Positions 9,285 to 31,000 of a stretch of DNA of 64,000 bases are shown here, piece by piece. Position numbers and translations under genes: made by a program. The notes below the pieces were generated by a model. It worked only from the letters and a program-made list of their open reading frames with translations, was not told the DNA's origin and made no database searches. Each line of letters opens with the position of its first letter. Position 1 is the stretch's first letter. Location: positions 62,001 to 126,000 of the IMG/VR virus record IMGVR_UViG_3300020810_001156; one strand, given 5' to 3'.

Positions 9285-12200
9285 TAGTAGAAAAAATCTA
9301 CCATTTAGCAGATTTACACATTCGTAATTTAAAAAGACATAAGGAGTATAGAGAAGTATTCCAAAAGTTTTTAGATAATGTAGATAGAGATAATATTGAA
9401 AACTCCATAATCTACTTAGCTGGTGATATTGCACATGCTAAAACCGAAATGAGTCCTGAGTTAATCAGAGAAATCAGTTGGTTCTTAACTGAATGTGCAA
9501 ATAGAAAACATACATTCCTTATTACGGGAAATCACGATTGTAACTTAAATAATAACTATCGATTGGATGTATTGACACCAATCGTTGAAAACTTAGAAAA
9601 TGACAGAATACACTATCTTAGAGATACTGGGACTTACCCTTTTGGTAACATCACTTTTGTTGTTTATTCGATACTCGATAAAAAAGAGAATTGGCCAAAG
9701 GCGGAATTGGTAGAAGGTGAGAATAAAATTTGTTTATTCCACGGACCTGTAAACTTAGCACAAACTGATATTGGATATACCGTATCATCAAACTCTTTTA
9801 CAACTGATATGTTTGAAGGATTTGATATGGTGATGTTGGGTGATATCCATAGGAGACAAACATTAGGTTCACCAACCATTGCATATGCTGGTTCGATGAT
9901 ACAACAAAATCACGGAGAAGCATTAGATAAACATGGTTACTTACTTTGGGATGTTGAAAGTAGAACTTTCGAAGAAGTTGATATTCCAAACGATTATGGA
10001 TTTTACACATTAGATGTAAACGATGGTATTGTTCCTAATGTTACCGATATGCCATCTAAACCTCGTTTGAGAGTTAGGATTTCAAATACCGAACCTTCTC
10101 AGATTAAAAAGGCATTAACCCAAATTAAAAAGAAATATAAAGTACAAGAGTTCACTGTTACTCGAATGGATACTTTATCAAAACAAAAAACGGGTAACTT
10201 TGATGATAAACTTGCAATTGGAAATGTGAGAGATGTAGAGTTCCAAAACGAACTCATCAAAGATTATTTGGAAAGACAGTATTTGGCAGATGAAGAGACT
10301 GTTGATAAGATACAACAAATCAATAGAGAAATCAACACAAAGTTGGTAGATGATGATGTAACTCCTAATATACAATGGGTGCCAAAACAATTTGAATTTT
10401 CTAATATGTTCTCTTATGGTGAGAATAATTTAATTAGATTTGACAACGCAAAAGGTATGGTAGGTATATTCGCACCTAATGCCTCAGGTAAATCATCTTT
10501 ATTCGATGCACTATCCTTTTGTATATTTGATAAGACAAGTAGAACTTATGTAGCAAAGAATATTCTTAATAATAGAAAGAGTAACTTCTATTGTAAACTG
10601 CACTTCCAAATAGAAGAAGTGGATTATTACATAGAAAGAAGAGCAAAGTTAATCAATAGAGGGAGAAATCTAAAAGTAGATGTATCCTTTTGGAGAGAAG
10701 ATGAGAGTGGTATCCACTCCTTGAATGGAGAGCAAAGGAGGGATACTAACTCCATCATTCAACAATACTTAGGTACATACGAAGATTTCGTTTTAACTAC
10801 TCTTTCACTTCAAGGAAATAATGCACTCTTTATTGATAAATCACAATCGGAAAGAAAAGAAATCCTTGCTCAATTTATGGGAGTAGATGTGTTTGATAAA
10901 TTGTATTCACATGCATCGGATGAGAATAGAGATAACGCTTCTCTAATCCGTAAGTTTAAGCAGGATGATTTTACACAAAAGTTAGCTGATATTGGTGTTG
11001 GGTTAAAGGAGAAAGAAGCTGAGTATAAGTTAAAGGAAATTCAATTGAACGCTTCAAAAGATGAAGTGGAGAAGCACAATCAGAAATTAATCTCTCTCAA
11101 CGAAAAGATTGTAAAAGTTAAATCCGACAATTATTCTTTAGACGAGTTAGAAACTAAAAAATCGACTTTAGAAACTTCGTTGACCGACTTGTTATCTCAA
11201 AGAGATACAACACAATCTAAGATTGATAAGTTTGAAGAAACTCAAATTGGATTAGAAGAAAAGATTGATTCATATGATGAAGATAAAATCGATGAGGGTC
11301 TAACCGAATATACTGAGGTGGGGAGTGAACTTACATTGATTGAAAACAATATTGAGAAACATCTTATAAAGAGTGAATCCCTTAGTGAGAGGAAACAACA
11401 TTTGGATTCCCACAAATACAATGAAGAGTGTGATATTTGTATGGAAAACTCACAAACTATCTTAGAGCAAAAAGAAAAGGTAGATGGTGAATTAGAAACC
11501 ATTAAATCAGAACTAAATGATTTGGAAACCAAACATTCGGAGTTAGTATCTAAAAGAAAAGAGTTGGCTCCATTTGAATCGGAATATACAAAGTTGAAAA
11601 AACTTAAAGAAGATGAAAACAATGTAAGTAGAGATATTAACACACTTATCAACAAGTTATCAACATTCGAAACTAAAGAAATCAAAATAAATGGTGAACT
11701 TCTTCAAGTTACACAACTTATCACCGATTATTTGGAGAATGAAAAGCAAATCCAAAAAAACAAAGAACTCAGAACTGAAATGGTTTCAGTAAGAGCAGAA
11801 TTGACTTCATCAAAAGATGATGTTGATAAATTAAACAAACAACTTCTTAAATTGAATGGTGAAGTTTCATCCCTAACAAATCAAAAGAAAACAATCGAAG
11901 ATAGAATTGAAGAAGTAGAAAAGTTAGAGGAGCAATTTGGATTATTTGAATATTACCTAAATGCTTTGGGTAAGGATGGTGTATCTTATGAATTGATTTC
12001 TAAAGCTCTTCCAATGATTGAAGGTGAGGTAAATAACATCTTAGGTCAAATCGTAGAGTTTGGCTTACAATTGGAGATGGATGGAAAGAACATTAACGCT
12101 AACATCGTTTACGATGACCAGAAATGGAGTTTAGAGATGTGTAGTGGTATGGAGAAGTTCATTAGTGGTTTAGCGATTAGAATCGCTCTAATCAACGTAT

Positions 12201-12412
12201 GTAATCTTCCTCGTCCTAACTTCTTAGTAATCGATGAAGGATTTGGAACATTAGATAATGAGAACCTTACATCATTGTATATGTTGTTCGCATATCTGAA
12301 AACACAATTTGATTTTGTGATGATTATATCACATATTGATTCAATGAGAGATGTAGTGGATTCTCTTATGGAAATTAAAAAAGTAAATGGATTCAGTAGT
12401 ATTAAATTTTAA
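9281..12412 (+). CDS. sbcDC: Fused Mre11/SbcD nuclease - Rad50/SbcC ATPase (T4 gp47-gp46 equivalent in one chain)
   Basis: N-terminal metallophosphoesterase motifs (ADLH, GDIAH, GNHD, GDIH); then Walker A APNASGKS, long coiled coil with CDIC zinc hook (11429-11440), signature CSGMEK, Walker B/D-loop LVIDEGFGTLD, H-loop ISH. No internal stop. Confidence 0.9.
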   Translation: MIVEKIYHLADLHIRNLKRHKEYREVFQKFLDNVDRDNIENSIIYLAGDIAHAKTEMSPELIREISWFLTECANRKHTFLITGNHDCNLNNNYRLDVLTPIVENLENDRIHYLRDTGTYPFGNITFVVYSILDKKENWPKAELVEGENKICLFHGPVNLAQTDIGYTVSSNSFTTDMFEGFDMVMLGDIHRRQTLGSPTIAYAGSMIQQNHGEALDKHGYLLWDVESRTFEEVDIPNDYGFYTLDVNDGIVPNVTDMPSKPRLRVRISNTEPSQIKKALTQIKKKYKVQEFTVTRMDTLSKQKTGNFDDKLAIGNVRDVEFQNELIKDYLERQYLADEETVDKIQQINREINTKLVDDDVTPNIQWVPKQFEFSNMFSYGENNLIRFDNAKGMVGIFAPNASGKSSLFDALSFCIFDKTSRTYVAKNILNNRKSNFYCKLHFQIEEVDYYIERRAKLINRGRNLKVDVSFWREDESGIHSLNGEQRRDTNSIIQQYLGTYEDFVLTTLSLQGNNALFIDKSQSERKEILAQFMGVDVFDKLYSHASDENRDNASLIRKFKQDDFTQKLADIGVGLKEKEAEYKLKEIQLNASKDEVEKHNQKLISLNEKIVKVKSDNYSLDELETKKSTLETSLTDLLSQRDTTQSKIDKFEETQIGLEEKIDSYDEDKIDEGLTEYTEVGSELTLIENNIEKHLIKSESLSERKQHLDSHKYNEECDICMENSQTILEQKEKVDGELETIKSELNDLETKHSELVSKRKELAPFESEYTKLKKLKEDENNVSRDINTLINKLSTFETKEIKINGELLQVTQLITDYLENEKQIQKNKELRTEMVSVRAELTSSKDDVDKLNKQLLKLNGEVSSLTNQKKTIEDRIEEVEKLEEQFGLFEYYLNALGKDGVSYELISKALPMIEGEVNNILGQIVEFGLQLEMDGKNINANIVYDDQKWSLEMCSGMEKFISGLAIRIALINVCNLPRPNFLVIDEGFGTLDNENLTSLYMLFAYLKTQFDFVMIISHIDSMRDVVDSLMEIKKVNGFSSIKF

Positions 12413-12415: not shown

Positions 12416-13234
12416 ATGAAAATAGGAATTGTTGGACAGGGTTTTGTGGGTAATGCGGTGTATCAGAAATTCAAAGAGTATTATGATGTACTTACTTATG
12501 ATTTAGATGAAACTAAATGTAATTCAATCTTAGAAGAAGTTGCTAAATGTGATTATGTATTCACTTGCTTACCAACTCCAATGAATGGGGATGGTAGTTG
12601 TAATACCAATATTGTAGAAGGTGTAATCAAACAAATTGATGAGATTGGTAAAACGAAGGGTATTGTGGTTAAATCAACTATTGTACCCGGTACTACTCAA
12701 AAATGGAATGATGAATATAAAACAAACATCGTATTCAATCCAGAATTCCTTACTGAAAGAAATGCGGTTAAAGATTACGAAAATCAAAACCGAATTATAT
12801 TAGGAGGACCAAGACCAACAACTACTCATCTGAAAAGAATATTTTCAAAAGTATTTCCAAGTGCATATATAATAAAAACTGATTCAACTCATGCTGAAAT
12901 GGTAAAGTATTTAACAAATACATTTCTTTCAACTAAAGTATCTTTTGCAAATGAGATATATCAAATTTGTAAAGGTTTAGATATCGATTATGATAAAGTA
13001 GTAGAATATGCAACCCACGATGAAAGATTGGGTAAATCACATTGGAACGTACCGGGTCATGATGGTGATTTTGGTTTTGGTGGACATTGTTTCCCCAAAG
13101 ATTTATCAGCACTTTTAAGATTAGCAGAAGATTTGAATGTGGTTGATAATGTACTCAGTGCAGTAGAACAAACTAATTACTCAGTTAGAAAGAATAGAGA
13201 TTGGGAAAAGATGAAAGGGAGAGCAGTTATTTAG
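12416..13234 (+). CDS. ugd: UDP-glucose/GDP-mannose dehydrogenase family protein, short form without the C-terminal domain
   Basis: Rossmann GIVGQGFVG, CLPTP, KSTIVPGTT, FNPEFLTE, catalytic GFGGHCFPKD; ends at 272 aa. Confidence 0.82.
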   Translation: MKIGIVGQGFVGNAVYQKFKEYYDVLTYDLDETKCNSILEEVAKCDYVFTCLPTPMNGDGSCNTNIVEGVIKQIDEIGKTKGIVVKSTIVPGTTQKWNDEYKTNIVFNPEFLTERNAVKDYENQNRIILGGPRPTTTHLKRIFSKVFPSAYIIKTDSTHAEMVKYLTNTFLSTKVSFANEIYQICKGLDIDYDKVVEYATHDERLGKSHWNVPGHDGDFGFGGHCFPKDLSALLRLAEDLNVVDNVLSAVEQTNYSVRKNRDWEKMKGRAVI

Positions 13235-13879: not shown

Positions 13880-16800
13880 ATGGCCAGAATTAAAAAGTAT
13901 TCACCTGAACAAAATTTATCATCGTTTCAAACTTTAATAGTAGATGAAAATCCCAATTCGGATTATTTTAGAATTACCGAATTTAAAGATACATTTACTG
14001 GTGGTAAAAATGGATTCCTAATAGAGGGTTCAGAATATCTAAAAGAATCTACTGAAATAAAAATTGAGATTTTAGATGTTAATGGAGAACCAATATATTA
14101 TGAACCAGGTAATGGAATCCCAGAATACTATGAAGGTATATCAAAGTTAATAGCTGTTTATATCTATGAAGATACTCCAATCGGATTGGGTAAGATTACT
14201 ATTTTGGGTGAACTAAAGGAGTATGATGATAATGGTGTAAAAAGACAAATTCCATCAGATTGGCGAGGTGCTTATAATGTTAAATGGGAAAGAACTTTTC
14301 AGATTAATAAAAATCTATCAAACGAAGATAGGGTAAGATTTTATCGTAGACCTAAGGTGGGTATTGATGAGATAGTTAAACCAATATTTAACAAAACCCC
14401 ACAAACAATTACTCAAACTGGGCAAGTAGATGGTTTACCTTTAATCCCAACCGAAAATACTCAACTATCTAATTTTTCTTTACCAACATCATATAGATTA
14501 AAAATCACAGATGATACATATTGGACCGGTTCTGCGGTTGGTCAACAAATAGAATTTAGTGGACTAAACTATTCACCAACCATTACTGATATTGTCAACA
14601 AAGATGAAGTATTAGTATCTCCACCATATTCTGAATCGGATTTAGTTAAACCATTTTCATCTCAAAATTATTCGGTATCATTTCCATATGTTGAGGGGGC
14701 AGTTGATTTAGCAACCGCTTTAACTGGTTCATTTGCTAAAATTAACATCACCAATATGAAAACATTTGTTGGTGATGCCGCTAGGGTTAAGGTGTTTAGA
14801 AAATCGGTATCCCAATTAACTGATTATGAGTTCGTACAAGAAATACAATTAGAATCAAACGAATTGTTGAGAGATTTAGAAAGTGTTGAATCAACGGAAA
14901 CTTTCTATGGTAATCTAAGTCAAAACTACATTAATAATTATTGGTTAACATCATCAAATGATTTAGTAACTACATTTAATCAAGATTTTTTATACAATTC
15001 TGTTGAACTTGATAATGGGGCATCTACTCCACAATATTTTTATACATCTCAATCATTGGGTATAACCAATGGTGTTGAATATAATTTATCGTTTAATGTT
15101 AGAAAAAGAACAAACATCTCAGCCGATGATTATTTAAAAGTTTATCTAAGTGGTTCGTTTGGAAATACAACTGTAGCACAAACAATTACAAATATAGGTA
15201 GTTCGAATGAATTATTACAAAAAACTTTAGTAAATGAAAATATAATTGCAGATAATATATCTGGTTCACAATTATATTTTGAAGTAAAAGGTAATGATTG
15301 GTTAATTAATAATATTTCATTAAGAGCAGCAGAAGAAACTTCTTTTTCTCCCGATGAAATTACATTTATACAAAGTGTACCAAAAACATTAGCTGAAGAA
15401 ACATTTGATTTTCGTTTTGAATTTTATGATATAAATAATAATTACATACCTGTATTAGTTGAAGAAACAAAAACATTCACAGGTGGTAACTTAAACTTAT
15501 TTACAAAAGAATTAATTCTTACACCAAATCAATTATATTTTGCATTTGATTCAGCATCGGCACCTGCAAATCCATTACCTCCATTAAACATTTTTATTGA
15601 TGTTGAAAAAAGAGTAATAACTGGTTCGGTAACATTTACATCTGGTGCATATGATGAGTTTGGAAATTTATTATCATCATCACAATATAATGGTGGGGTA
15701 TTTCCTGGTCTATTAACGGACAGAGATAAAGATATTGTAAAATTAAATGTATCTGATTATACTGGTTCAAGAGATGATATTACAGTTCAATATATTGAAT
15801 ATACTGGTGAGGTTGAGGGTGTAACCGATTCATTCGTAATCACTAGAGTTCAAGATGGTAAGGGTGGTGTAAACTTTGAGATTAGGCCTTACAGAGGTAC
15901 AATTATCAAAAACAAAGATGATAAAGAATTAGAAATTCAAGCAATTCGTATTGATGGTATTAATGAAATTATTCTTAAAGATAATTTACCACAAACTGGA
16001 TTTTCCGATGCAAAACTTAGAGTCCTTTCATCATCAATAGATGAAGTAACATTGGAAGAAAGTGGTTCTTATATACTTCTTTCAGAGGCATCATCTACTA
16101 AATTTATTAAAGGATTAAACGCTGGTTTAACTGGTAGTGGTGAAATTGATTATAACGCAAGATTTAATAGAGATTCTATTGATAATGAATTGACCGTATT
16201 CTTAATGGATGGTGAAACTTCTCAATCAATTCTTACATCAATTATTCTTACCGATTTACAAGATGGTTTAGATAGTGGGTTTGTAACATTTGATGCAGAT
16301 GTATTTACTATTAATCCAAGAACACAAACTCAATTTACTCCGCAATTTAGTAGTGTAACGGGTTCTTTTTATAAGAGGGGTACTAAAGCAAATCCAGTAT
16401 CAGCATCGATTGAGATATTCCCATCGATGTCAATCAATAAAGATTTTGTTCCTGAATACTGGATGTATTTTGTATCTCATTCTAAAGATGAAAGTATTGA
16501 GGTAACGGCATATGATGAGAATGGATTCTATTCACCACATGGTGAGTTGGGTTCATATATTGGGTTACCTGCTTCACAAAGCAAACAACTATTGGTAAAC
16601 TTTACTTACACAGAACCAGTAACTTCTGCATCGGTTCAAGTTGACCATATTTTCACCATTGTACCTGAAGGTAAGCCGGGTGATGAAACTGTATTGTTTG
16701 AAGTTAACCCTCAGACTGTAAATCTAAAATCGGATAGTAGAGGTAATGTCAATGATTTTAAACAATCTATAACTGATATTAGTTTAAGACAGGGTTCAAG

Positions 16801-19800
16801 ACGATTAATATTTACGGGTAGTGCAGAACCCGGTACGTTTACAATAGCATCCGAATCTATCAGTTCACAAAACATTGAAGTGGGATTACTACACTTAACT
16901 TCATCATTTGGTACTGATTATACGGCATCATTGATTGTAAGTGAATCATCAAACTTTACACAACTTAGTGGTAGTATTACATATCCATTAGAGATTAGAC
17001 CTTACTTTACATCATCTGTTTACACACAAAGTTTTACTCAAAATTTTACTAAAATATTAGATGGACCTCCTCCAATAGAACTAAACATAGTTCCTCAATC
17101 TGTAACTTTAATTGCTAATGAAGTAGAATTTGTAGGTGATTATTCCAACGCTACAACAACAATTACGGTAAAAGAGGGTTCTGATAATTTAATAAACACC
17201 AGTAGTGGTGCACCTGGTACATTTACTTTAGAATCTATTAATACAACAAACATAACTTCAAATTTAGTTTCGTTGGAAGGTGGAATATCTGCTAGTGTTG
17301 AATTTAGTGAATTTGAATATCCATATGTATCTGCTAGTGTTACATATAATATTAATGTATTTCCATTTTCATTAGGACCTGGTCATGAATATTCATCTTC
17401 TGTTTTTGAAAGAACTCAAAATTTTGTTAAAAGTATTACACCTCCAAACGCTAGAAGTGTTGAGTTAACAGCAACATCAGAAGTAGTTCACTTTGATGGT
17501 GATGGACAGGTAACATCTCCATTAGGTGCAATTACATTAACTGCTGAAGCTTACAATACAACAGGTTCTGTTTATTACGGATTCTTTAGAGATAGTTATG
17601 TGTGGCAACCATATTCACAAACAAATACAGTAACTGTTGGTTCTGGTGATGCAACTGAAGCTGGTGAAACTGTAAGCTGGGAGGTACGAATTAGAGATGG
17701 TGGTTCAACGGCTAATGTAGTAGCTACTGATGCAATTACTATTACTGGTGTACAAGATGGAGCATCAAATTATAATGTACAATTGGATAACCCATCTGTA
17801 ACTCTTACATCTGATGTAGATGGTACAACTCACTTTACTGGTAGTGGTGCTGTAATCAGAGCCGTAAAAGGTGTAACACCGCTAACTCACGTAACTTCAT
17901 ATTCACCATCCGACTATGTTTATGATGAGCAGGGTGTATTTATTGGTAACTTAGGACAATATTCTGCATCGATAGAATCTAAAAGTCCTTATTTAAATCA
18001 AACGGGAATATTCGCTGGAAACCCTGCAACTTTACCTGAAATACCAAATGGTGGTTGGACTTCACCATTTGATAATCCAACTGGAACAATTGTTTACAAA
18101 GTTGATATTGAAAATGGTAGAGCAACTTATTTCTTATCACAATCATTTGCAGTAACATTCGAAGGAGCAACTGGTCCTGGTGTTGTTGTAAGAGGTGAGT
18201 GGAATGCGAATGTTCCATATCTGTTTACTGGAACAAGAAGAGATGCGGTTGTTCAAGAGATTAGTGGTGATACACACTATTGGGCAACAACTGAAGCACT
18301 TATAAACAAACCAGCATATACTGATGGAAGTGCACCATATACCGCACAACCAACATTACCACCTGGCCCACCATATGAAGAAGGTTATGAAGATGCAACA
18401 ACTGGGTGGGAATACTTAGGACAAGAAGATTTCTTCGTAGCTGCTAAGATTGCAATTTTTGAAGAATCATTTGTAGAAAACACAATAAATGTTGGTAAAC
18501 CATCAACTGATTATAGTGTTAATCCACAAATAGCAATTTATGGTGGTGATAGTGAACCTTATATAGCCATCGGACAAGGAACTCAAGGATATGGACAGCA
18601 AGGTATATTTTTGGGTGTAACTGAAGATGGTGGACCTAATGGAACACAAGGAACATCTGGATTATTCTCAATAGAAAATGATACTGGTGATAGATATCTA
18701 AGATGGGATGGTTATGATTTAGAAATAGCAGGTTCGATACAAATCAAAGGAGGTTCTGCCGCAACCACTTCAAGCGTTGATGCTATCAACAACGCAACAG
18801 GTGGATTTATAAACCCATCGGAATATCAATTCGGACCAGGTAGTAGTCCTGATTTCTTCGAATTGGGAGAATTACCAGCAACTCCATCAGTTCCAGGTCT
18901 ATATTTAGGTTCTGATAATTTAGGTTATCACGATGGAACTGATTGGAACGCATTTTTAGATAATAATGGTAACTTTTATTTAGGAGGAGAAGAAGGTGGT
19001 TCATTATCATTCCAACAATCATCGGGTAATTTAAAAGTTTCTGGTATCGTATCAGCATCGGCTGGTATATTTGGTGGATTGGTAATTGATAATACTGGTG
19101 TATTCTTCCCATCAACATATGATGTGGGTAATCAATACTTTGGTGAAAGTGTTGTAACTCAATCTTTATCTTATATTGATTTTACGGATGCTATAACAAA
19201 TCAAGGTGGAGGTAGTAGAGCAATTATTGAAAGAAATACATCAATTTCTGATGTTGGTGATAATGCATATAAACAAATGACGAGAACCGCAGACCCATTT
19301 GGTAGTGGTTCTGCAGTTATGACAGCATTTGGTCTTGTAACCACAACAAACTTAGTAACAGGTTCAGCATCTGGTTCTTTCTTTGGTTCAGATAATGCAC
19401 ACTTTAAAGTAACTCCAAACTTATACGCACTTAATTCATCATATGAAATTGATTTTTGGTGGACTGGTTCATTTAATTTAGATGCTGGTGGTGCCAATGC
19501 CTCTAACTTAGTTTGGCAAGCTGGTACAAATCAAATTATAACATCCGATTCATCTTGGGAAGATGCTATCGGTTCACCTTATATACCAGATGAGTGGTTT
19601 CATGGTAGCCTTGATAGTGGAGCTGACCCAAGAATGAGTGCGTACATTCATGCATATGATGTACCTGTTTTAGGTATTGGTAATATTGTAGATTTGTATA
19701 TTCCAATTGTTCAATATCTAAACTCAACAACTTTACGTTCAACGGAAGATAATAACTATGGTAGTGATATAGAACTACATAACGCAGGAAGCGTAACTTT

Positions 19801-22288
19801 ATATTTAATTGATAGAATGTATGCAGGTGGTGGTGGAGAAGGTGTAAATACAATTAATGCTGGTTCACTTACTGCTGGTAGAGTTGAACCAAGAAGTATA
19901 ACTGGAGAAGCATTAAGAATATCAACATCTGGTTCATTGGATGGACAAACTCTCCCATTCTTATCTATGGGACAGCTTACTGCATCATATGATGCGCAAG
20001 GATTATTTTTCGGATTCCCATCTGGTTCAACTGTTCCAAGAATTTCTATGAGAGGACCTGATGGTAGTTTCTTTAGATATGATGGTAGTGTAGTACAAAT
20101 GAGTTCGGATATTATTGGTGGGGCAATTGAAGGTTCGGATATTGTTGGAGGTACAATCAGCGTACCAGCTACTGGAGTAAGTGCATCATTTAGTGTAAAT
20201 GCTCAGGGAGCATTATCAGCTTCCGATGCAAACATTCAGGGTATTATCAATGCTAATTCTGGTAGAATTGGTTCTTGGGTAATTGATGAAGATACTCAGG
20301 CATTAAGAGATGATAACTCTGAAATCGTATTTGAACCTAATATTCCTGAAATACAATTATTTGATAGTGCAGCTGCTAAGAAAGTAATTATTTCTCCATC
20401 GGATACCTTAACTGGTACGGGTGGAACTACAACTACTGTAGAATGGATAACAGCAGCACCAGACCCCAGTGATGTTAGATACGCTGGTACTGGAAATTCA
20501 AGCGGTATAATATCACAAGCATCCAGTGCTACAACAACACTTGTTCAATTTGGTAGTTACATATCTGGTGGATTAAGTGATTCTGATGATGAGGGAACAG
20601 ATGATGGATTGTTTGGTGTAACTGCTGGTGATTTAGAAGTAACGATAAATGTACCAGAAATGTATTTGATGAAACCAGAAGGTAGTTCGGTATCACATAC
20701 TACATCTTATCCAAATTATAATCCAACTTATAATTCTCAACTACATGGAGGAAGTTCTTTTCCGAAATATGCCTATGCATATCTTTATTTAGAATGTGTA
20801 GATACCGATACCTCTAATAGTGTTTTGGGTAGAACATTAATAGCAGCCGTTAATTCAAGAAGTGATTATACTGCTGGTAATTATTACGTTGGTGATGTTA
20901 ATGACGGTGGTGGTGGGGGAACATCTTTCCCAGGTATAAGTTCAGTAACTGGTGATACTGAAATTACATTAGCATCTGGAAGAAAAATGAGAGCAGACCA
21001 GATATTTAGTGGTGAACCTTTAAAAGTTTGGAGTTGGAACGATAAAATAGATGGTGTAGATGAAATAAATAAATTTGATTCATTTAAATTAGAAAAAGTA
21101 AAAAAACGAAAAGTAGATAAAGTTTATAAAGTAGTTGTTGGTGATAAGGAAGTGAGAGTTTCCGATACTCATGGGTTTTGGTTAGATAATAATGAAGAAG
21201 TAACCGCAGTTGATATTATACCAAATGAAACTAAAGTTTACATAGTAGATGGTGATACTATAAAACTACAAACAGTTGATTCAGTTGAAGAGATTGAAAC
21301 TGATGAGTGGGTATATACATTTGAAGTACCGGGTGTTCATAATTACATATCAAATGATATTTTATCACACAACCCATCAACTTGGACTTATACATCTGCT
21401 ACTACTGTAAGTGGATATGTTGGTTCTCAATCAGCAATAAGCAATCAAACTAAAACAATTAATATATCTCGAGCGGCAACTAATGCAGCATTCAGATATT
21501 CTATACGTTTAGCAGCTGCTTCAGGTAGAGCTATTAATGTAGATTCATCTGGTAACAGTTTAAATAGTTACAAAACACATACTGTTAGGTATGATGCTCT
21601 AAGAGCAGCAGGTCCAATACCAGCTGGATATTTGGGTAGAGCGGGTGGATATCAACCTGATTTATTATTAGATACTAATGTTAGTTTTGCGTTAGCATCT
21701 AACTTTGTTGAAATTAAAGCAGGTGGTATTCAGGTTGTATCAGACCCAGATACATTTGTTAAAATACCTAGACAAGCTACTGGGGGTGGAACAATTTTAG
21801 AAGCAAAAGGTGGAGAATCTATTTTCGAAGCTACGGGAACTGGAATTGGCCAGACTGCAATGACTGTAAAAGGTAATCTTATGCCAGAAAATGGTGATGA
21901 TTTTGATTTCGGTAGTGCTTCGGATATGTGGAAAAATATTTACGGCCATAACCTCAATGGTGTAGATATTGAAAACTTAGCTGTATCATTAGATGATGGT
22001 CCCGGTGCAACTACCACAGATACTAACTCAGTTAATGATAACTATGATAGTTATGTAAAATTGCCTGGTGGTGTTATCTTACAATGGGGACATATTTATG
22101 ATACATCATCACCAAGATATGTTGCATTCCCTACCCAATTCCCAAATGTTATTCATTCGGTAGTTTGTTCTACAAATAGAAATTCTGGTGGTAGTAACGG
22201 GTATAATCATGTTTACAACTACGATAGAAATGGTGTAGAATTAATTTTAGATGGTAATTATGGATTTTGGATTGCAATCGGACATTAA
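13880..22288 (+). CDS. Giant tail fibre / receptor-binding protein (2802 aa) with an internal Hint domain and a gp53-like C-terminal domain
   Basis: S/T/G-rich beta-type sequence; C-terminal YVKLPGGVILQWG...VAFPTQFPN is the common tail-fibre tip motif; immediately followed by a fibre-assembly chaperone. Confidence 0.75.
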   Translation: MARIKKYSPEQNLSSFQTLIVDENPNSDYFRITEFKDTFTGGKNGFLIEGSEYLKESTEIKIEILDVNGEPIYYEPGNGIPEYYEGISKLIAVYIYEDTPIGLGKITILGELKEYDDNGVKRQIPSDWRGAYNVKWERTFQINKNLSNEDRVRFYRRPKVGIDEIVKPIFNKTPQTITQTGQVDGLPLIPTENTQLSNFSLPTSYRLKITDDTYWTGSAVGQQIEFSGLNYSPTITDIVNKDEVLVSPPYSESDLVKPFSSQNYSVSFPYVEGAVDLATALTGSFAKINITNMKTFVGDAARVKVFRKSVSQLTDYEFVQEIQLESNELLRDLESVESTETFYGNLSQNYINNYWLTSSNDLVTTFNQDFLYNSVELDNGASTPQYFYTSQSLGITNGVEYNLSFNVRKRTNISADDYLKVYLSGSFGNTTVAQTITNIGSSNELLQKTLVNENIIADNISGSQLYFEVKGNDWLINNISLRAAEETSFSPDEITFIQSVPKTLAEETFDFRFEFYDINNNYIPVLVEETKTFTGGNLNLFTKELILTPNQLYFAFDSASAPANPLPPLNIFIDVEKRVITGSVTFTSGAYDEFGNLLSSSQYNGGVFPGLLTDRDKDIVKLNVSDYTGSRDDITVQYIEYTGEVEGVTDSFVITRVQDGKGGVNFEIRPYRGTIIKNKDDKELEIQAIRIDGINEIILKDNLPQTGFSDAKLRVLSSSIDEVTLEESGSYILLSEASSTKFIKGLNAGLTGSGEIDYNARFNRDSIDNELTVFLMDGETSQSILTSIILTDLQDGLDSGFVTFDADVFTINPRTQTQFTPQFSSVTGSFYKRGTKANPVSASIEIFPSMSINKDFVPEYWMYFVSHSKDESIEVTAYDENGFYSPHGELGSYIGLPASQSKQLLVNFTYTEPVTSASVQVDHIFTIVPEGKPGDETVLFEVNPQTVNLKSDSRGNVNDFKQSITDISLRQGSRRLIFTGSAEPGTFTIASESISSQNIEVGLLHLTSSFGTDYTASLIVSESSNFTQLSGSITYPLEIRPYFTSSVYTQSFTQNFTKILDGPPPIELNIVPQSVTLIANEVEFVGDYSNATTTITVKEGSDNLINTSSGAPGTFTLESINTTNITSNLVSLEGGISASVEFSEFEYPYVSASVTYNINVFPFSLGPGHEYSSSVFERTQNFVKSITPPNARSVELTATSEVVHFDGDGQVTSPLGAITLTAEAYNTTGSVYYGFFRDSYVWQPYSQTNTVTVGSGDATEAGETVSWEVRIRDGGSTANVVATDAITITGVQDGASNYNVQLDNPSVTLTSDVDGTTHFTGSGAVIRAVKGVTPLTHVTSYSPSDYVYDEQGVFIGNLGQYSASIESKSPYLNQTGIFAGNPATLPEIPNGGWTSPFDNPTGTIVYKVDIENGRATYFLSQSFAVTFEGATGPGVVVRGEWNANVPYLFTGTRRDAVVQEISGDTHYWATTEALINKPAYTDGSAPYTAQPTLPPGPPYEEGYEDATTGWEYLGQEDFFVAAKIAIFEESFVENTINVGKPSTDYSVNPQIAIYGGDSEPYIAIGQGTQGYGQQGIFLGVTEDGGPNGTQGTSGLFSIENDTGDRYLRWDGYDLEIAGSIQIKGGSAATTSSVDAINNATGGFINPSEYQFGPGSSPDFFELGELPATPSVPGLYLGSDNLGYHDGTDWNAFLDNNGNFYLGGEEGGSLSFQQSSGNLKVSGIVSASAGIFGGLVIDNTGVFFPSTYDVGNQYFGESVVTQSLSYIDFTDAITNQGGGSRAIIERNTSISDVGDNAYKQMTRTADPFGSGSAVMTAFGLVTTTNLVTGSASGSFFGSDNAHFKVTPNLYALNSSYEIDFWWTGSFNLDAGGANASNLVWQAGTNQIITSDSSWEDAIGSPYIPDEWFHGSLDSGADPRMSAYIHAYDVPVLGIGNIVDLYIPIVQYLNSTTLRSTEDNNYGSDIELHNAGSVTLYLIDRMYAGGGGEGVNTINAGSLTAGRVEPRSITGEALRISTSGSLDGQTLPFLSMGQLTASYDAQGLFFGFPSGSTVPRISMRGPDGSFFRYDGSVVQMSSDIIGGAIEGSDIVGGTISVPATGVSASFSVNAQGALSASDANIQGIINANSGRIGSWVIDEDTQALRDDNSEIVFEPNIPEIQLFDSAAAKKVIISPSDTLTGTGGTTTTVEWITAAPDPSDVRYAGTGNSSGIISQASSATTTLVQFGSYISGGLSDSDDEGTDDGLFGVTAGDLEVTINVPEMYLMKPEGSSVSHTTSYPNYNPTYNSQLHGGSSFPKYAYAYLYLECVDTDTSNSVLGRTLIAAVNSRSDYTAGNYYVGDVNDGGGGGTSFPGISSVTGDTEITLASGRKMRADQIFSGEPLKVWSWNDKIDGVDEINKFDSFKLEKVKKRKVDKVYKVVVGDKEVRVSDTHGFWLDNNEEVTAVDIIPNETKVYIVDGDTIKLQTVDSVEEIETDEWVYTFEVPGVHNYISNDILSHNPSTWTYTSATTVSGYVGSQSAISNQTKTINISRAATNAAFRYSIRLAAASGRAINVDSSGNSLNSYKTHTVRYDALRAAGPIPAGYLGRAGGYQPDLLLDTNVSFALASNFVEIKAGGIQVVSDPDTFVKIPRQATGGGTILEAKGGESIFEATGTGIGQTAMTVKGNLMPENGDDFDFGSASDMWKNIYGHNLNGVDIENLAVSLDDGPGATTTDTNSVNDNYDSYVKLPGGVILQWGHIYDTSSPRYVAFPTQFPNVIHSVVCSTNRNSGGSNGYNHVYNYDRNGVELILDGNYGFWIAIGH
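20942..21373 (+). other. Hint (intein-like) domain, 144 aa, without an endonuclease
   Basis: Block A SVTGDTEITLASG, block B VSDTHGFW, blocks F/G VYTFEVPGVHNYISNDILSHN, followed by Pro. Confidence 0.8.
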
Positions 22289-22299: not shown

Positions 22300-22689
22300 A
22301 TGAGTGATATACGATACTTTGGACATTATGATGAAAATGGGGATTATAAAGCATTTTTCCCAACGGATATACATCCCGATACAGGTTCTATGGACACTCC
22401 CAACATAGAGTTAACAAAAGAACAATGGATTGAGGCAAGGCAAACTAGATGTAGAGTAATCGATGGTATTCACACAGTTGTACCATTAACTACCGAAGAA
22501 CAAAACGAAAGAGATTTACAAAATATTAGAAGAGAAAGAAATGAACTTTTGGATAAATCGGATTGGGTTGTACTTCCTCATTCTCCTATTACTGGTTCTA
22601 AATTAGATGATTGGTTACAATATCGACAATATTTAAGAGATGTAACTTCTCAAACTCCTCCATATACTTTACCAACTCAACCGGAATAA
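22300..22689 (+). CDS. Tail fibre assembly chaperone (Tfa/TAC-like)
   Basis: IRRERNELLDKSDWVVLPHSP...WLQYRQYLRDVT motif; directly downstream of the fibre gene. Confidence 0.8.
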   Translation: MSDIRYFGHYDENGDYKAFFPTDIHPDTGSMDTPNIELTKEQWIEARQTRCRVIDGIHTVVPLTTEEQNERDLQNIRRERNELLDKSDWVVLPHSPITGSKLDDWLQYRQYLRDVTSQTPPYTLPTQPE

Positions 22690-23083: not shown

Positions 23084-25267
23084 ATGCCTAAAAAGAAAAA
23101 ACTGTTATACATTGCACCCCATCTTTCTACTGGGGGCATGCCACAATATCTTCTCAAACAAATCCAAACATTTGTAAATGATTTTGAAATAGTTGTTGTT
23201 GAATATAATGACCATAGTGGTGGTGTATTTGTAGTTCAAAAAAATCAAATAAATGATTTAGTGAAACTATACTCTTTATATGAAAATAAAAAAGAGTTAT
23301 TAGAGATTATAGATTCCGAAAATCCTGATATAATTCATTTTCACGAAATACCACATCATTTTGTAGATACATCTTTATTAGATATTATTTTTGATAATGA
23401 AAAAAGAAATTATAATATTGTAGTAACCACACATGGTTCACTAACAAATCCAGACGAAATAAGATATCATCCAGATAGATATGTTTTGGTATCTGAGTGG
23501 AGTAGAAGAAAATTTGAACATTTAGGTATTGAAACTGATATTTGGGATTACCCAATTGAAGATTTTAAGTATGATAAAAAATCTGCAAAAAAAGAATTAG
23601 GATTTGAATCCGATTGGAAGCATGTAGTGATGATTGGTTTATTTACTGAGGGTAAAAATCAAGGTGAAATATTTGGGGTAGCTAGACAAATGGAAAAGTA
23701 CAAAATTAAATTTCACTTTGTTGGAAACCAAGCTATGAACTTCGAAAATTATTGGAAACCTTTAATGGATGTTAAACCCGATAATTGTATTATTTGGGGA
23801 GAACGAAATGATGTAGATAAATTTTACAAAGCATCGGATATGTTTTATTTTAGTTCTAAATTAGAATTAAATCCTTTATCGGTTAAAGAAGCATTATCAT
23901 ATGGATTACCATCTATATTCAGAAAACTACATACTTATTTGGATACATATGATGATAATCCACTGGTTACTTATATCGATGATGATTTAAATAATACTAA
24001 ACAAATTATATTAGAAAAGTTACAACCTGATTTTAATGAAGTACCTGGTTGGTTTTCATATTCTGATTTATACGATAAGGTGATTAGGGATTTGCCCGAT
24101 AATTCTAATATAGTTGAGGTTGGTAGTTGGTTAGGTAAATCTACCAATCATATGGCCAACAAAATAAAATATTCAAAAAAGAACTTTAATTTTACAACAG
24201 TTGATACGTTTAAGGGTACAATTGATGAAACTTTACATCAGAGTATTGTAAATAGTTTTGGGGGAGATGTATTTTATGAATTTATAGATAACACAATTTT
24301 ATCAAACAACTATAACAACTTTGAAATTATAAAAGATACATCCGAAAATGCGTCATCCCAATTTCAAAATAACTCATTAGATTTTGTTTTTTTGGATGCG
24401 GGCCACACATATGATGATGTGATTAAAGATATAAAATATTGGTATAAAAAAGTTAAGCCAGGTGGAATTATTGCTGGTGATGATTATGTTAAGGAATTTA
24501 TGGGAGTAGTTGATGCTGTGAGAGAATCGTTTTATTATCAGTTTGAACAAATAAACAAATTTCAATGGGCTAGAAGAAAACCTCGTATTCAAATCAAACA
24601 CCTAATGACTAGGCCAAATGATTTAAGAGAAATGGTATCACAAGCTTCACTTAAACAATTGGAAAGGTATGGAATGGTTTATGAACCAATTGTAAATAAA
24701 CCTTATACTGATTTTGCACCAAAGGAATTTTGTAGAAGGCCTGAACATCTAAGTAAAGATAACAAACCGGGTGAGTTATATCCTGGTGCTGGTTTGGGTT
24801 GGATAACTGGGGGGCATTATGGGTGCTATATGGCTCATAGAGGTGCTTTGGAAACAATGGATAATGATAACTTTGATTATACTCTTATCTTCGAAGCTGA
24901 TGCATTTATTTATACTGGTTTAGAGGAGTTTGTAGATATTGTACATAAAGCTTGTTTCATATCAGAAAGAGATGATGTTACCTACATATCTTTCGCTGAT
25001 AATCCATCTAGAAGTAAAGAAAAAATAGATGAGTTGTTTTCCAAAACGGCACATAATCAAGATTTAGCACATGCTTATTTAATACCAAATCGTAAAAAAC
25101 AATGGTGGTTAGATAGAATCAAAGATTGTAAGTGGGATGTTGCTGATTTGTGGTATAACCACGTATTCTACGAACATCCAGAAAAAAGATATACAACCAA
25201 TAAAGTATATTCAAAGCAAGCAGAAGGATACTCTTTATTAGATTTAAAAAATAAAACTTGGTTATAA
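23084..25267 (+). CDS. Triple fusion: GT-B (GT4-like) glycosyltransferase + class I SAM methyltransferase + GT25-like glycosyltransferase
   Basis: PHLSTGGMPQY / KNQGEIF / ELNPLSVKEALSYGLP (GT4); VEVGSWLGKS / FLDAGHTY / KVKPGGIIAGDDY (Methyltransf_24-like); GHYGCYMAH / LIFEADA (GT25-like). Confidence 0.82.
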   Translation: MPKKKKLLYIAPHLSTGGMPQYLLKQIQTFVNDFEIVVVEYNDHSGGVFVVQKNQINDLVKLYSLYENKKELLEIIDSENPDIIHFHEIPHHFVDTSLLDIIFDNEKRNYNIVVTTHGSLTNPDEIRYHPDRYVLVSEWSRRKFEHLGIETDIWDYPIEDFKYDKKSAKKELGFESDWKHVVMIGLFTEGKNQGEIFGVARQMEKYKIKFHFVGNQAMNFENYWKPLMDVKPDNCIIWGERNDVDKFYKASDMFYFSSKLELNPLSVKEALSYGLPSIFRKLHTYLDTYDDNPLVTYIDDDLNNTKQIILEKLQPDFNEVPGWFSYSDLYDKVIRDLPDNSNIVEVGSWLGKSTNHMANKIKYSKKNFNFTTVDTFKGTIDETLHQSIVNSFGGDVFYEFIDNTILSNNYNNFEIIKDTSENASSQFQNNSLDFVFLDAGHTYDDVIKDIKYWYKKVKPGGIIAGDDYVKEFMGVVDAVRESFYYQFEQINKFQWARRKPRIQIKHLMTRPNDLREMVSQASLKQLERYGMVYEPIVNKPYTDFAPKEFCRRPEHLSKDNKPGELYPGAGLGWITGGHYGCYMAHRGALETMDNDNFDYTLIFEADAFIYTGLEEFVDIVHKACFISERDDVTYISFADNPSRSKEKIDELFSKTAHNQDLAHAYLIPNRKKQWWLDRIKDCKWDVADLWYNHVFYEHPEKRYTTNKVYSKQAEGYSLLDLKNKTWL

Positions 25268-28004: not shown

Positions 28005-31000
28005 ATGAACGAACTATCTCAATTTTTAGTAGAGAGTATATTAGGAGAAGCGGACAGTGTAGACAACATCGTTGTAGTTTACGCTGGCCGCTTTCAACCT
28101 TTTCATAAAGGTCATTACGCAACCTATTCCCACTTAGTAAAAAAGTTTGGAAAAAACAATGTGTATATCGGTACATCCAACAAAACCGATAATAATAAAT
28201 CCCCATTCAACTTCAAAGAAAAGGTAATGATTATTACCAAAATGTTTGGGATTCCAAAAAACAAAATTGTTCAAGTTAAAAATCCCTATGTACCAACTGA
28301 GGTATTAACGAAGTTTGATAAAGATACAACTGCATTTATTACTGTTGTAGGTAAAAAGGATGCAAGTAGATTAGGTGGTAAGTTTTTTACTCCTTATAAA
28401 GATGGTATCGATTTCGAAGGATACGAAGATAGAGGATATGTTTACATCGCACCCGAAGGTGGTGGGGGTGTAAGTGGAACTGAAGTTCGTAACGGATTAT
28501 CATCAGGTTCAGAAGAAGATAAGAAAAACTTTTTTGTAAAAAGAGCATATCCAAAATTTGATAAAAAGATATTTGATTTCATAACTAACACACTAAATGA
28601 AGAATTTAGTATTTCAAAAGAAATAGTAGAAAATTGGTTAATAGCTGAAGGTAGTGATTTAATCAAAGAGGCATCTAAAGTTTTAGGTTCACAAGAAGTT
28701 GATGATGGTCCAAACTTTTTATTTCCATCGTATGCAATATTCGATAGAGTTTCCCAAAAAAGAGCAGAACAAATTGGATACACTGTTTTATCTCAGATTA
28801 TGAGTGCGGAACTTACTGATATTGACCCACATCCAATTTATCCTGATGGGCCTGTAAAAGCAGTAACTCCATTTCCAGCTGGTGTAGCTGGTAAAACAAC
28901 TGCAACTAACCAAAAGGATTACTATGGTTCAATTGCATATGATAAATGGTGGAAGCATGTAACTCGAACCGCTGGTTTAGTTGGATATTCTTTAATTGAT
29001 TACATTGATTTGGAGGTTGATAGAAAAGAATCAACTAAAGATTTATCACAAGAAAAGAAACCAGTTAGTAACACACTCAAAGAAGATATCAAACTTCCAG
29101 TAAATGTGGGTGATACAATCTTAACGGGTAGATTTAAAAATAAAAAGACAGTTGTTAAAACTATTGGTAAAGATGAACATGGGATGCCAACAATCAATGG
29201 TAGAAAAGTTGTAAACTTTAGAATCTTAAAAGAAGGTGTACAAGTTCAATTGGATGAAATCCCAATGGCTGATTTACAAAAGATTGACCAATATGCAGAT
29301 AAACAGCTTAATCCAGTTGATGTAGTTTTAACCGATAAGCATTTCTTTGATAGATTAACTGACCCAAGAAATAAAAAACCAATATCACCTGCAGAACTAA
29401 TTGGATTCTTTAAAAGATTAGGAAAGAAGAAAAAAGATTTCTTAAACTTCTTACAATTGTACGGACAAATTGTAGCAAAGGATAATAGAAGTAAAATCAA
29501 CATTCCATTTATGAAACAAGCGAATAAAGTAATCGCTAAGACCGTAATGAGAAAAGATGATTTTAAAACACCAGACCCAGAATATAAATTCGAAGGTGTA
29601 AATGATTTCTTCTATATGGATTTCAAAAAATGGGCACATAAAAATAGAGCAAAAATCAATAAAATGGATTATGAAGATAAGATTGAATTCTTATCAGATA
29701 AATACATGAAAGACCACGGAAAGTGGCATAGGGGAGAAAGTCCTGATTATATTGGCGCTGAGTTAGTTCACTTATTGGTAAAAGATAGAATTATCAAAGA
29801 AGGATTGGCAATGGGTTATCCAGACCAAAAATGGTTAGATGACCACGAAAAGAAATTAAAAAAATTAAGAAAGAAATTTGATAAAGAAAAACTTCAGTAT
29901 AATGAACCATTCGCATTAGGTGGTGGTATTACTGAATCATTGATTTTGGAAGGAGGTGCTTATGGACATATGAATCACCCATTCGATACCGAAATCAATT
30001 TAACTTTTGGACAATTAAAAGATATCGTAAATAGAGCTTTAGAGGGTAATTTAGAACTCACTAGAGAAAAGACCGATGGTCAAGCATTAGCAGTTAGTTG
30101 GAGAGATGGGAGATTAGTTGCAGCGAGAAATAAAGGACATTTGAAAAACAAAGGAGCTGGAGCATTAGATATCAATGGTGTAGCGATGAAGTTTGCTGGT
30201 AGAGGAGAATTGGAAAAGGCGTATAACTTCGCAATGAAAGATTTAACGAAGGCAATATCTAAGTTGAGTGAAAAGCAGAGAGATAAGATTTTCAAAGGAG
30301 GAGCATGTTTTATGAATTTGGAGGTAATCTATCCAACTTCTGTTAATGTAATACCTTACGGACAAGCACTATTAGTATTCCACGGAACAATGGAATACAA
30401 TGAGGATGGTATCGCAATTGGTGAGAACCAAGATGCAGCGAGAATGTTGGCAGGTATGATTAAACAAATCAATGCAGATGTTCAATCCGCTTACACAATC
30501 CAAGGCCCACCAGTAGTTCAATTACCTAAATCCAAAAACCTTTCTTCACTCAAAGGAAAGTATAATGGACAAATCTCAAAACTACAATCTAAATTTAAGT
30601 TAAAAGATAACGATGGAATCGCTGATTATCATCAAGCATTTTGGATGGATTTTGTGAATAAGAAATCACCATCTAAGTTAGATAACAAAACTCTAATGGG
30701 ATTAGTAAAGAGATGGGCATTCTATGATAAATCATTCAGATTAGATAATAAGAATATTACTGATGAAAAAACATTAGAATGGGCAAAGGGAATTGATAAG
30801 AATGACCACGCTAAAATGGCTAAAGATAACATCAGACCATTTGAAGATATCTTCTTAGGTTTAGGAGCAGAAGTACTTTCATTTATGAGTTCAGCACTAA
30901 CTGTTAATCCTGATAGTGCAGTTAGAGATATGAAAAAGAGATTAGACCAAACCATTAAAGATGTAAGAAAATCAGGTGACCCTAAGAAAGTAAAAAAACT

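What the first reader, a model, noticed from the sequence alone, without database searches (positions are those of the whole stretch)
20942..21373. Non-canonical Hint domain (Ser1 ... His-Asn | Pro) inside the tail fibre
Seen: after a GGGGG linker comes a 144-aa Hint domain starting with Ser rather than Cys, with SDTH in block B and a terminal HN followed by Pro. Established: splicing needs Cys, Ser or Thr at +1, so this domain cannot splice conventionally; BIL-type Hints self-cleave. Inference: an autoproteolytic switch that releases or exposes the ~300-aa distal tip during assembly or adsorption, or allows attachment of a nucleophile (hedgehog-like). It could also be an inactive structural relic.
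Basis: partly seen in the sequence, partly recalled or inferred. Interest (0 to 1): 0.6.

Follow-up and report, generated by a model that had tools for sequence, protein, structure and literature searches.

The report
Self-cutting Hint domain inside phage tail fibre
A giant tail-fibre protein of an uncultured 253-kb marine phage carries a real, strongly conserved, cysteine-free intein-like (Hint) domain that cannot splice in the textbook way; it sits in a loop of a single folded domain, so it more likely cuts itself out of the fibre than releases the fibre tip.

Summary
Residues 2355-2498 of the 2802-aa fibre ORF (nt 20942-21373) form a 144-aa Hint domain: Ser1, block B Ser-x-x-His, C-terminal His-Asn, then Pro. 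Sequence and predicted fold both support this (VIA Z 19.9 to the NpuDnaB intein).

It is not a one-off. I found 75 distinct copies in giant fibres of uncultured phages. Ser1, block-B His and His-Asn never vary. The +1 residue is P, V, T, S, D, A, I, Y and others, never Cys. The block-F Asp that activates a +1 nucleophile is Thr/Ser.

The Hint is the most conserved part of the fibre's C-terminal region (dN/dS 0.08-0.26 against 0.29-0.71 in its flanks). 52 of 53 long homologues keep it. The one Hint-less orthologue nests among Hint-bearing ones.

The two flanks are predicted to form one interleaved beta-sandwich (ipSAE 0.88, best control 0.00). Cleavage should therefore not free the tip.

Best reading: a vertically inherited, intein-derived Hint working like a type A BIL. 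It excises itself by a Ser1 ester and Asn cyclisation, leaving the host domain re-ligated or nicked. No experiment exists.

Verdict: new variant of a known kind; interest 0.6.

The parts
13880..22288 (+). Giant tail-fibre ORF, 2802 aa.
   Evidence: The C-terminal Gp53-like_C domain scores E 6e-12. The tip matches R2 pyocin fibre and AP22 gp53 structures.
20426..20896 (+). N-terminal half of the split beta-sandwich host domain (aa 2183-2339). It includes the strand at about aa 2296-2307 that pairs with the C-half.
   Evidence: The AF2 model has high pLDDT here. VIA rows spanning model residues 34..456 match CBM/jelly-roll folds. Interface contacts are listed.
20897..20941 (+). Flexible linker VNDGGGGGTSFPGIS (aa 2340-2354). 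GGGGG is at nt 20906-20920. Ser2354 is the -1 residue.
   Evidence: pLDDT is below 50 here. A Gly-rich linker is present across the family.
20942..21373 (+). Hint domain, 144 aa (aa 2355-2498). Key residues: Ser1 at nt 20942-20944; block B SDTH at 21161-21172 (S2428 = B:7, H2431 = B:10); block F VYTFEV at 21311-21328 with T2480 (F:4) at 21317-21319; His2497-Asn2498 at 21368-21373.
21374..21694 (+). C-terminal half of the split beta-sandwich (aa 2499-2605). It begins with Pro2499 (+1, nt 21374-21376) and the conserved Trp2502. The strand AFRYSIRLAAA (nt 21488-21520) pairs antiparallel with aa ~2296-2307.
21695..22285 (+). Distal tip. It holds the near-invariant joint motif SNFVEIKAGGIQVV (nt 21698-21739) and Gp53-like_C (aa 2727-2802, nt 22058-22285). 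This is the part that is swapped between relatives.
22300..22689 (+). Tail-fibre assembly chaperone, 129 aa, directly downstream.
   Evidence: Pfam Phage_tail_APC E 9e-13. PHROG tail fibre assembly families match. The same gene sits downstream in relatives.

Best explanation
The element is a vertically inherited, cysteine-free mini-Hint of intein ancestry. It is inserted in a surface loop of a beta-sandwich domain about 300 aa from the C-terminus of a giant tail fibre, and it works like a type A bacterial intein-like (BIL) domain.

Inferred chemistry:
1. Ser2355 makes an N-to-O acyl shift at the Ser2354-Ser2355 bond, helped by Ser2428 and His2431.
2. Asn2498 cyclises, helped by His2497, and breaks the Asn2498-Pro2499 bond.
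3. With no +1 nucleophile there is no branched intermediate.
4. The ester is resolved in one of two ways. The freed Pro2499 amine attacks it and re-ligates the chain (the type A BIL route), or water attacks it and leaves a nick.

In either case the Hint leaves, and shaft and tip stay together, because its two flanks are the two halves of one interleaved domain. The event is therefore a maturation step of the fibre, not a release of the tip.

Shown here: the fold, the residue set, its invariance, purifying selection, co-inheritance with the flanks, and the predicted split domain.

Inferred only: that cleavage happens at all, whether the ends are ligated or nicked, and when.
For: Fold and motifs.

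Family survey:
- 75 distinct complete copies have Ser1 in 75/75. The +1 residue is P18, V14, T11, S8, D6, A5, I4, Y3, E2, and N, M, F, R once each; Cys 0.
- In a 32-sequence alignment with 44% mean column identity, the invariant columns include S1, V2, block-B His and His-Asn. B:7 Ser is near-invariant.
- F:4 is Thr/Ser instead of the Asp that hydrogen-bonds the +1 thiol in inteins (PMC4031507). This fits the loss of the +1 step.
- Close relatives swap Val and Thr at +1 (L006 against L007).

Selection:
- The Hint is more conserved than both flanks in 31 of 36 homologues.
- dN/dS is 0.08-0.26 for the Hint against 0.29-0.71 for the adjacent flanks.

Inheritance:
- 52 of 53 long fibre homologues carry it.
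- Hint identity tracks flank identity (Spearman 0.88 and 0.78), but not the swapped extreme tip (0.37).
- No homing endonuclease is present in any copy, and there is no other Hint in the 252.6-kb genome.

Split host domain:
- ipSAE 0.88 against best control 0.00. That mark was reached by 58 of 80 solved complexes and 2 of 110 mismatched pairs. Runs agree in at least 96% of contacts and partner pLDDT is at least 89.
- Jelly-roll/CBM matches span model residues 34..456.
- The Hint-less syntenic orthologue P0200/P0211 has a continuous chain.

Type A BIL chemistry is described in PMC4031507.
Against: - No experiment exists. The family is known only from metagenomes, and tblastn against 50,697 phage records found nothing.
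- A Ser1 oxyester is less reactive than a thioester (my own chemical knowledge, not tested). Re-ligation by a Pro secondary amine is also unproven.
- Pfam and intein_Nterm scores fall just below their curated cut-offs.
- The block-F His of the H-N-Y motif varies across the family, and F:4 Asp is missing. Either could slow the reactions.
- Invariant catalytic residues are also what a purely selfish intein shows when it must excise to spare its host. Conservation therefore does not prove a benefit to the phage.
- The split-domain result is a prediction on monomer pieces. The real fibre is probably a trimer, and the sandwich could form between chains.
Confidence: 0.55

Rival explanations
1. The Hint is an autoproteolytic switch that releases or exposes the ~300-aa distal tip during assembly or adsorption.
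For: Both scissile-bond residue sets are intact and there is no +1 nucleophile. In polymorphic toxins, HINT proteases sit just before a C-terminal module that is released (PMC3482391).
Against: - The flanks are predicted to be two halves of one interleaved beta-sandwich with about 500 contacts, so cutting the loop should not separate them.
- The tip is a receptor-binding-type module (Gp53-like_C, or an S74 chaperone in relatives) with its own chaperone gene downstream. It must stay on the virion.
- The Hint-less orthologue is one continuous chain.
Confidence: 0.1
2. The Hint is an inactive structural relic, kept as a knob-like decoration on a loop of the fibre.
For: A Hint's two ends lie close together, so it can sit in a loop without breaking the host fold. 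Pro at +1, the loss of F:4 Asp and a sub-threshold Pfam score all depart from the intein canon.
Against: - Ser1, block-B His and His-Asn are invariant in 75 distinct copies down to about 30% identity.
- dN/dS is lower than in both flanks.
- A relic would lose exactly these residues first.
Confidence: 0.12
3. The Hint is a ligase rather than a protease. The Ser1 ester is resolved by an amine other than its own chain's +1 residue: a Lys, or the freed N-terminus of a neighbouring chain in the trimer. This would staple the fibre covalently, in the manner of BUBL or hedgehog.
For: The best Foldseek match is Tetrahymena BUBL1 BIL2 (E 3e-11). That domain makes a Lys-epsilon-to-C-terminus isopeptide (PMC8616854). 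There is no +1 nucleophile. Three Hints would lie close together in a trimer.
Against: - By VIA-align, inteins match as well or better (Z 19.9 against 18.7), and sequence similarity is to inteins.
- No invariant Lys is found in the conserved flanks near the junction.
- An oxyester is a weak acyl donor.
Confidence: 0.1
4. It is an ordinary selfish mini-intein that still splices canonically, at least in members with Ser/Thr at +1.
For: 19 of 75 copies have Ser or Thr at +1. Intein models are the best sequence matches.
Against: - The window has Pro at +1.
- +1 flips between Val and Thr in close relatives.
- F:4 Asp is absent family-wide.
- Distribution is near-universal and co-inherited with the host gene, not sporadic, and no endonuclease is present.
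Confidence: 0.05
5. Its conserved DNA serves mainly as a recombination handle for swapping tip cassettes.
For: It is the most conserved stretch next to variable tips, and alternative tips exist (Gp53-like_C against Peptidase_S74).
Against: - The swap boundary lies about 100-200 aa downstream, near the SNFVEIKAGGIQVV motif, not at the Hint. The first 200 aa after the Hint co-vary with it (rho 0.78), while the last 100 aa do not (0.37).
- This idea does not explain invariant catalytic residues.
Confidence: 0.05

Closest known systems
Type A bacterial intein-like (BIL) domains, for example the Clostridium thermocellum BIL (PDB 2LWY)
   Same: Both have the HINT fold (Z 18.4), an N-terminal nucleophile, block B His, a C-terminal His-Asn and no conserved +1 nucleophile. 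Both lack an endonuclease and sit in variable surface or secreted proteins. The expected chemistry is also the same: an ester or thioester plus Asn cyclisation, with cleavage dominant and ligation by the freed amine possible (PMC4031507).
   Different: - It has Ser1 (an oxyester) instead of Cys1.
- Its sequence is closer to true inteins than to solved BILs: E 6e-8 against 0.35, and 2LWY is not found at E<=1.
- Its host is a phage virion protein.
- It is inserted inside a folded domain.
Class 1 mini-inteins (the CDC21-1 mini-intein of PDB 6rpp/6rpq, Npu/Ssp DnaB, the cysteine-less Aes123 PolB1 intein)
   Same: These are the best sequence and structure matches. They share Ser/Cys1, B:10 His, the block F-G layout and His-Asn.
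   Different: - It lacks the +1 Cys/Ser/Thr.
- F:4 is Thr/Ser, not Asp.
- B:7 is Ser, not Thr.
- It is fixed and co-inherited in one host gene family rather than sporadic.
Tetrahymena BUBL1 BIL2 (PDB 6TMM/6Y75)
   Same: It is the top Foldseek match and is also a Hint without a +1 nucleophile.
   Different: BIL2 has Cys1, is zinc-activated, and transfers a ubiquitin-like domain to Lys residues (PMC8616854). Identity to it is only 16-18%. No such target is evident here.
PT-HINT (PF07591) of polymorphic toxins
   Same: It is also a Hint placed just before a variable C-terminal module in a very long filamentous protein (PMC3482391).
   Different: - The window's Hint does not match PF07591 at E<=1.
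- The module after it is a fibre tip, not a toxin.
- Six relatives carry a separate PT-HINT-type Cys1 Hint directly upstream of the Ser-type one.
Peptidase_S74 intramolecular chaperone of tail spikes and fibres
   Same: It is a self-cleaving module built into phage fibres and removed after assembly. Relatives L006 and L007 carry it at the end of the same protein.
   Different: The fold and chemistry are unrelated. S74 is C-terminal and is cut once. It is absent from the window's protein.

Membership tests
HINT superfamily (fold) | Hint beta-fold with the N- and C-termini adjacent | tested here: met
   The AF2 model has pLDDT 87. VIA gives Z 19.9, rmsd 1.8 A over 136 residues to NpuDnaB. Hedgehog gives Z 17.7. 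Foldseek E-values reach 3e-11.
Class 1 intein | Cys or Ser at position 1 | tested here: met
   Ser2355. Ser in 75/75 family members.
Class 1 intein | Block B Thr(B:7)-x-x-His(B:10) | tested here: inconclusive
   His2431 is invariant. B:7 is Ser2428 rather than Thr and is near-invariant Ser in the family.
Class 1 intein | C-terminal His-Asn | tested here: met
   His2497-Asn2498 is invariant. NCBIfam intein_Cterm is over its cut-off.
Class 1 intein | Cys, Ser or Thr at +1 of the C-extein | tested here: not met
   Pro2499. In the family 56 of 75 copies lack a nucleophile and none has Cys.
Class 1 intein | Score over the curated family thresholds | tested here: not met
   Pfam PF14890 scores 33.6 against 35.8. 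TIGR01445 scores 23.0 against 24.5.
Class 1 intein | Sporadic, mobile distribution with many empty alleles | tested here: not met
   It is present in 52 of 53 homologues and co-varies with its flanks. The single empty orthologue is nested among carriers.
Type A BIL | Intein-like C-terminal His-Asn together with no +1 nucleophile | tested here: met
   The definition is from PMC4031507.
Type A BIL | Sequence membership in the BIL A motif set of Amitai et al. 2003 | not testable with these tools
   No BIL-A profile is on hand. By sequence, solved BILs are weaker matches than inteins.
Type A BIL | Self-cleavage, or splicing without a +1 side-chain nucleophile | not testable with these tools
   This needs expression and mass spectrometry.
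PT-HINT (PF07591) | Match to the Pfam model | tested here: not met
   The window's Hint has no hit at E<=1. The extra upstream Hint of P0161 does match, 28.7 bits over the 27.7 cut-off.
Hedgehog/Hog Hint | Hint module (PF01079) followed by a sterol-recognition region, with no C-terminal Asn cleavage | tested here: not met
   There is no PF01079 hit. His-Asn is present and a folded fibre domain follows directly.

The most novel reading that the evidence does not exclude
The Hint is an autocatalytic stapler. In the assembled trimer, the Ser1 ester of one chain is attacked by the freed +1 amine (or a Lys) of another chain. The three fibre chains would then become covalently cross-linked or chain-swapped at the shaft-tip junction, making an enzyme-free way to toughen a very long fibre. 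A second reading would also be new: the Hint is a timed checkpoint that keeps the split beta-sandwich immature until the tip has trimerised.
Probability: 0.1. Interest if true: 0.85.

Novelty: new variant of a known kind. Interest (0 to 1): 0.6.

Why it matters
Hint domains without a +1 nucleophile (BILs) are known from bacterial surface and toxin proteins and from ciliate ubiquitin-like loci. Three full-text searches found no report of one in a phage tail fibre.

Here a whole family of giant fibres of uncultured marine phages keeps one. It is under stronger constraint than the receptor-binding region around it, and it sits inside a folded domain.

If it self-excises, fibre maturation in these phages includes a protein-splicing-type step that genome annotation misses. 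The mature fibre would then differ from the predicted gene product.

For protein engineering, a compact 144-aa cysteine-free Hint that tolerates at least 13 different +1 residues and 11 different -1 residues would be a useful starting point for cleavage or ligation tags.

The finding is directly testable with one expression construct.

Tried and rejected
- Megablast and tblastn of the region against 50,697 phage records found no match, so no cultured relative and no proteomics are available.
- Searching with the tip alone returned mostly gene fragments on 1-2 kb contigs. The two credible short proteins (P0203, P0208) share only the distal ~200 aa. There is thus no evidence for a stand-alone tip gene starting at +1.
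- Pfam, PHROGs and NCBIfam gave nothing for the shaft (aa 1-2150) or the N-flank.
- I considered that the junction might use a nearby Ser/Thr at +2 or +3. These positions are not conserved either.
- I considered the Hint as a recombination handle. I rejected this because the swap boundary lies downstream.
I could not measure active-site geometry or flank contacts in the AF2 monomer model, so I used VIA ranges and the complex test instead.
- I did not use the sequencing-read tools, because nucleic-acid reads cannot show protein processing.
- The shaft tree was made with FastTree only, and fibre genes are mosaic. The inferred loss of the Hint in P0200 is therefore tentative.
Full report
**Setting.** The window is bases 62001-126000 of a 252.6-kb IMG/VR virus record judged complete.
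- It encodes terminase, portal and major capsid proteins.
- The capsid protein's nearest cultured relatives, at 52% identity, are Flavobacterium phage immuto and Microcystis phage Mel-JY01.
- The finding lies in ORF 13880..22288 (+), 2802 aa.
- That ORF ends in a Gp53-like_C tail-fibre domain. Its tip matches R2 pyocin fibre and AP22 gp53 structures.
- A tail-fibre assembly chaperone gene follows it (Phage_tail_APC).
- It is therefore a giant tail fibre.

Nt 20942-21373 encode residues 2355-2498.
- The residues are Ser1-Val-Thr-Gly-Asp-Thr (block A), Ser2428-Asp-Thr-His2431 (block B), VYTFEV..VHNY (block F) and NDILSHN (block G), followed by Pro2499.
- Sequence models recognise an intein splicing domain: Pfam E 4e-8, 33.6 bits against a cut-off of 35.8.
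- NCBIfam intein_Cterm is over its cut-off and intein_Nterm is just under.
- PDB sequence hits are to the CDC21-1 mini-intein of PDB 6rpp, Pho RadA and Ssp DnaB.
- An AF2 model built on 32 homologues has pLDDT 87.
- It superposes on NpuDnaB intein at Z 19.9 (rmsd 1.8 A, 136 residues). PhoCDC21-1, Tetrahymena BIL2, the C. thermocellum BIL and hedgehog all score Z 17.7-19.3.
- The real departures are Pro at +1, Ser for Thr at B:7, and Thr for Asp at F:4.

**It is a family, and the family defines what matters.**
- An exhaustive profile-free search of 1.84 billion representatives found 152 hits. The top ~40 are Hints of this type inside proteins of up to 3367 aa, always about 250-345 aa from the C-terminus.
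- A word search with the fibre's last 653 aa found 53 long homologues. 52 of them carry the Hint.
- Pooling everything gives 75 distinct complete copies. Position 1 is Ser in all.
- The +1 residue is P18, V14, T11, S8, D6, A5, I4, Y3, E2, and N, M, F, R once each. It is never Cys.
- In a 32-sequence alignment with 44% mean column identity, the invariant columns include Ser1, Val2, block-B His, an Asn-Tyr in block F and His-Asn. B:7 Ser is near-invariant.
- F:4 is always Thr or Ser. In inteins, F:4 Asp has been seen hydrogen-bonded to the +1 thiol (PMC4031507). Its loss fits the loss of the +1 step.
- Close relatives differ by Val against Thr at +1 (L006, L007). An occasional Thr is therefore not a sign of canonical splicing.

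**It is constrained and inherited with its host.**
- The Hint is more conserved than both flanks in 31 of 36 homologues.
- Against two relatives with DNA in hand (L008, L009), dN/dS is 0.08-0.26 for the Hint and 0.29-0.71 for the adjacent N-flank and C-extein.
- Hint identity tracks the identity of the N-flank (rho 0.88) and of the first 200 aa after it (rho 0.78). It does not track the last 100 aa (rho 0.37), which are swapped between lineages.
- No copy has an endonuclease insert, and the genome has no other Hint.
- One orthologue, P0200 (with a second member, P0211), lacks the Hint. It lies in the same gene neighbourhood and runs as one chain from N-flank to tip.
- In a FastTree of the first 700 aa it nests among Hint-bearing fibres (SH-like support 98). 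This suggests a secondary loss. The caveat is that fibre genes are mosaic.

**What the Hint interrupts.**
- An AF2 model of aa 2150-2802 shows confident beta structure on both sides of the Hint and a disordered Gly-rich linker before it.
- In a Foldseek-independent structure search, ten jelly-roll/CBM-type chains aligned over model residues 34..456, a range that reaches across the Hint. Their Z of 5.8-7.0 is middling on its own.
- I then tested the two flanks as separate chains: aa 2180-2354 and aa 2499-2610, each with 37 homologues.
- The complex scored ipSAE 0.88 in all three runs against a best control of 0.00. That mark was reached by 58 of 80 solved complexes and 2 of 110 mismatched pairs. 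The counts hold only roughly here, because my own alignments were used.
- The runs agree in at least 96% of contacts, and partner pLDDT is at least 89. There are about 500 contacts.
- There is a clear antiparallel strand pairing between aa ~2296-2307 and aa 2537-2547.
- The model supports, but does not show, that the flanks are two halves of one interleaved beta-sandwich with the Hint in a loop.

**Mechanism.**
- The residue set is that of a type A BIL: an N-terminal nucleophile, His-Asn, and no +1 nucleophile.
- For those domains the accepted scheme is (thio)ester formation at the N-junction and Asn cyclisation at the C-junction. Then either hydrolysis or attack of the freed amine on the ester follows. 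Cleavage products dominate (PMC4031507).
- I propose the same here with a Ser oxyester.
- Asn-Pro is listed as a hydrolysis-prone peptide site (PMC10056213). From general chemistry, not tested here, Pro blocks the competing deamidation route. Pro at +1 is therefore compatible with C-terminal cleavage.
- Because the flanks form one domain, either outcome keeps shaft and tip together.
- Conservation alone cannot tell a useful maturation step from a fixed selfish element that must excise so as not to harm the fibre. I rate self-excision of some kind at about 0.55-0.7. Whether the ends are ligated or nicked remains open.

**Rivals and the boldest reading.**
- The best Foldseek hit, Tetrahymena BIL2, ligates its N-extein to Lys side chains (PMC8616854).
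- A stapling or chain-swapping role in the trimer is therefore conceivable.
- However, no invariant Lys is seen near the junction, and inteins fit the model equally well.
- I give this reading about 0.1.

**Comparison and novelty.**
- It works like a type A BIL, but by sequence it is nearer to true mini-inteins.
- It fails the intein test at +1 and the PT-HINT test at the model level.
- Three full-text searches found no description of a Hint in a tail fibre.
- I file it as a new variant of a known kind: a Ser1, F:4-Thr/Ser, +1-promiscuous Hint fixed inside a split domain of phage fibres.

**Limits.**
- Everything about chemistry and timing is inferred.
- All structure is predicted on monomers.
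- The family is known only from metagenomes, apart from one NCBI record, MDA7492346.1.

Noticed in passing
Relatives P0161, P0162, P0163, P0166, P0170 and P0181 (for example P0161 aa 2208-2359); not in the window: Six fibre homologues carry a second, Cys1 Hint (CLIGSSLIEM...ILTHN). It matches PT-HINT over its cut-off. It lies directly after the poly-Gly linker and only 7-10 aa before the Ser-type Hint. In the shaft tree it is scattered, with non-tandem sisters, so it looks sporadic, unlike the fixed Ser-type Hint.
   Followed up: partly
L011:2501-8824 (P0200) and P0211: This is the Hint-less orthologue of the fibre gene in the same gene neighbourhood (SbcCD-like gene upstream, Phage_tail_APC downstream). 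It serves as a natural empty-site control.
   Followed up: yes
window 21698-21739: The near-invariant motif SNFVEIKAGGIQVV marks where tips diverge or are swapped. The same motif starts the homology with small, unrelated fibre proteins (P0203, 208 aa; P0208, 494 aa). It is probably the true module joint or recombination point.
   Followed up: partly
L006:3001-4671, L007:3001-4680: Relatives at 43% identity keep the Hint but end in a Peptidase_S74 intramolecular chaperone instead of Gp53-like_C. One protein would then carry two different self-cleaving modules.
   Followed up: partly
Proteins P0037, P0051, P0053, P0058, P0067 and P0090; also P0035, P0044, P0046-P0048 (hits): Two other uncharacterised Hint groups turned up. 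One has 2-4 tandem Hints ending in VHN-K-G(G). The other is a set of ~330-aa proteins with an N-terminal Hint ending in LLHN-F-D.
   Followed up: no
window 12416-13234, 23084-25267, 28005-31151: Sugar-nucleotide and glycosyl-transfer genes surround the fibre gene: a UDP-glucose dehydrogenase-like gene, a glycosyltransferase plus methyltransferase fusion, and a 1048-aa cytidylyltransferase-like protein. The first two are syntenic in relatives.
   Followed up: no
window 48811-63297: A 4828-aa ORF has no significant Pfam match and no Hint. It is a second giant protein, lying downstream of the head genes.
   Followed up: no
window 21374-21979 (aa 2499-2700): dN/dS reaches 0.71 against L009 in the segment just after the Hint, the fastest-evolving part of the gene measured. 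This is consistent with host-range pressure next to a slowly evolving Hint.
   Followed up: partly
window 9281-12412: A single 1043-aa ORF matches both SbcC-like and SbcD-like PHROG families.
   Followed up: no
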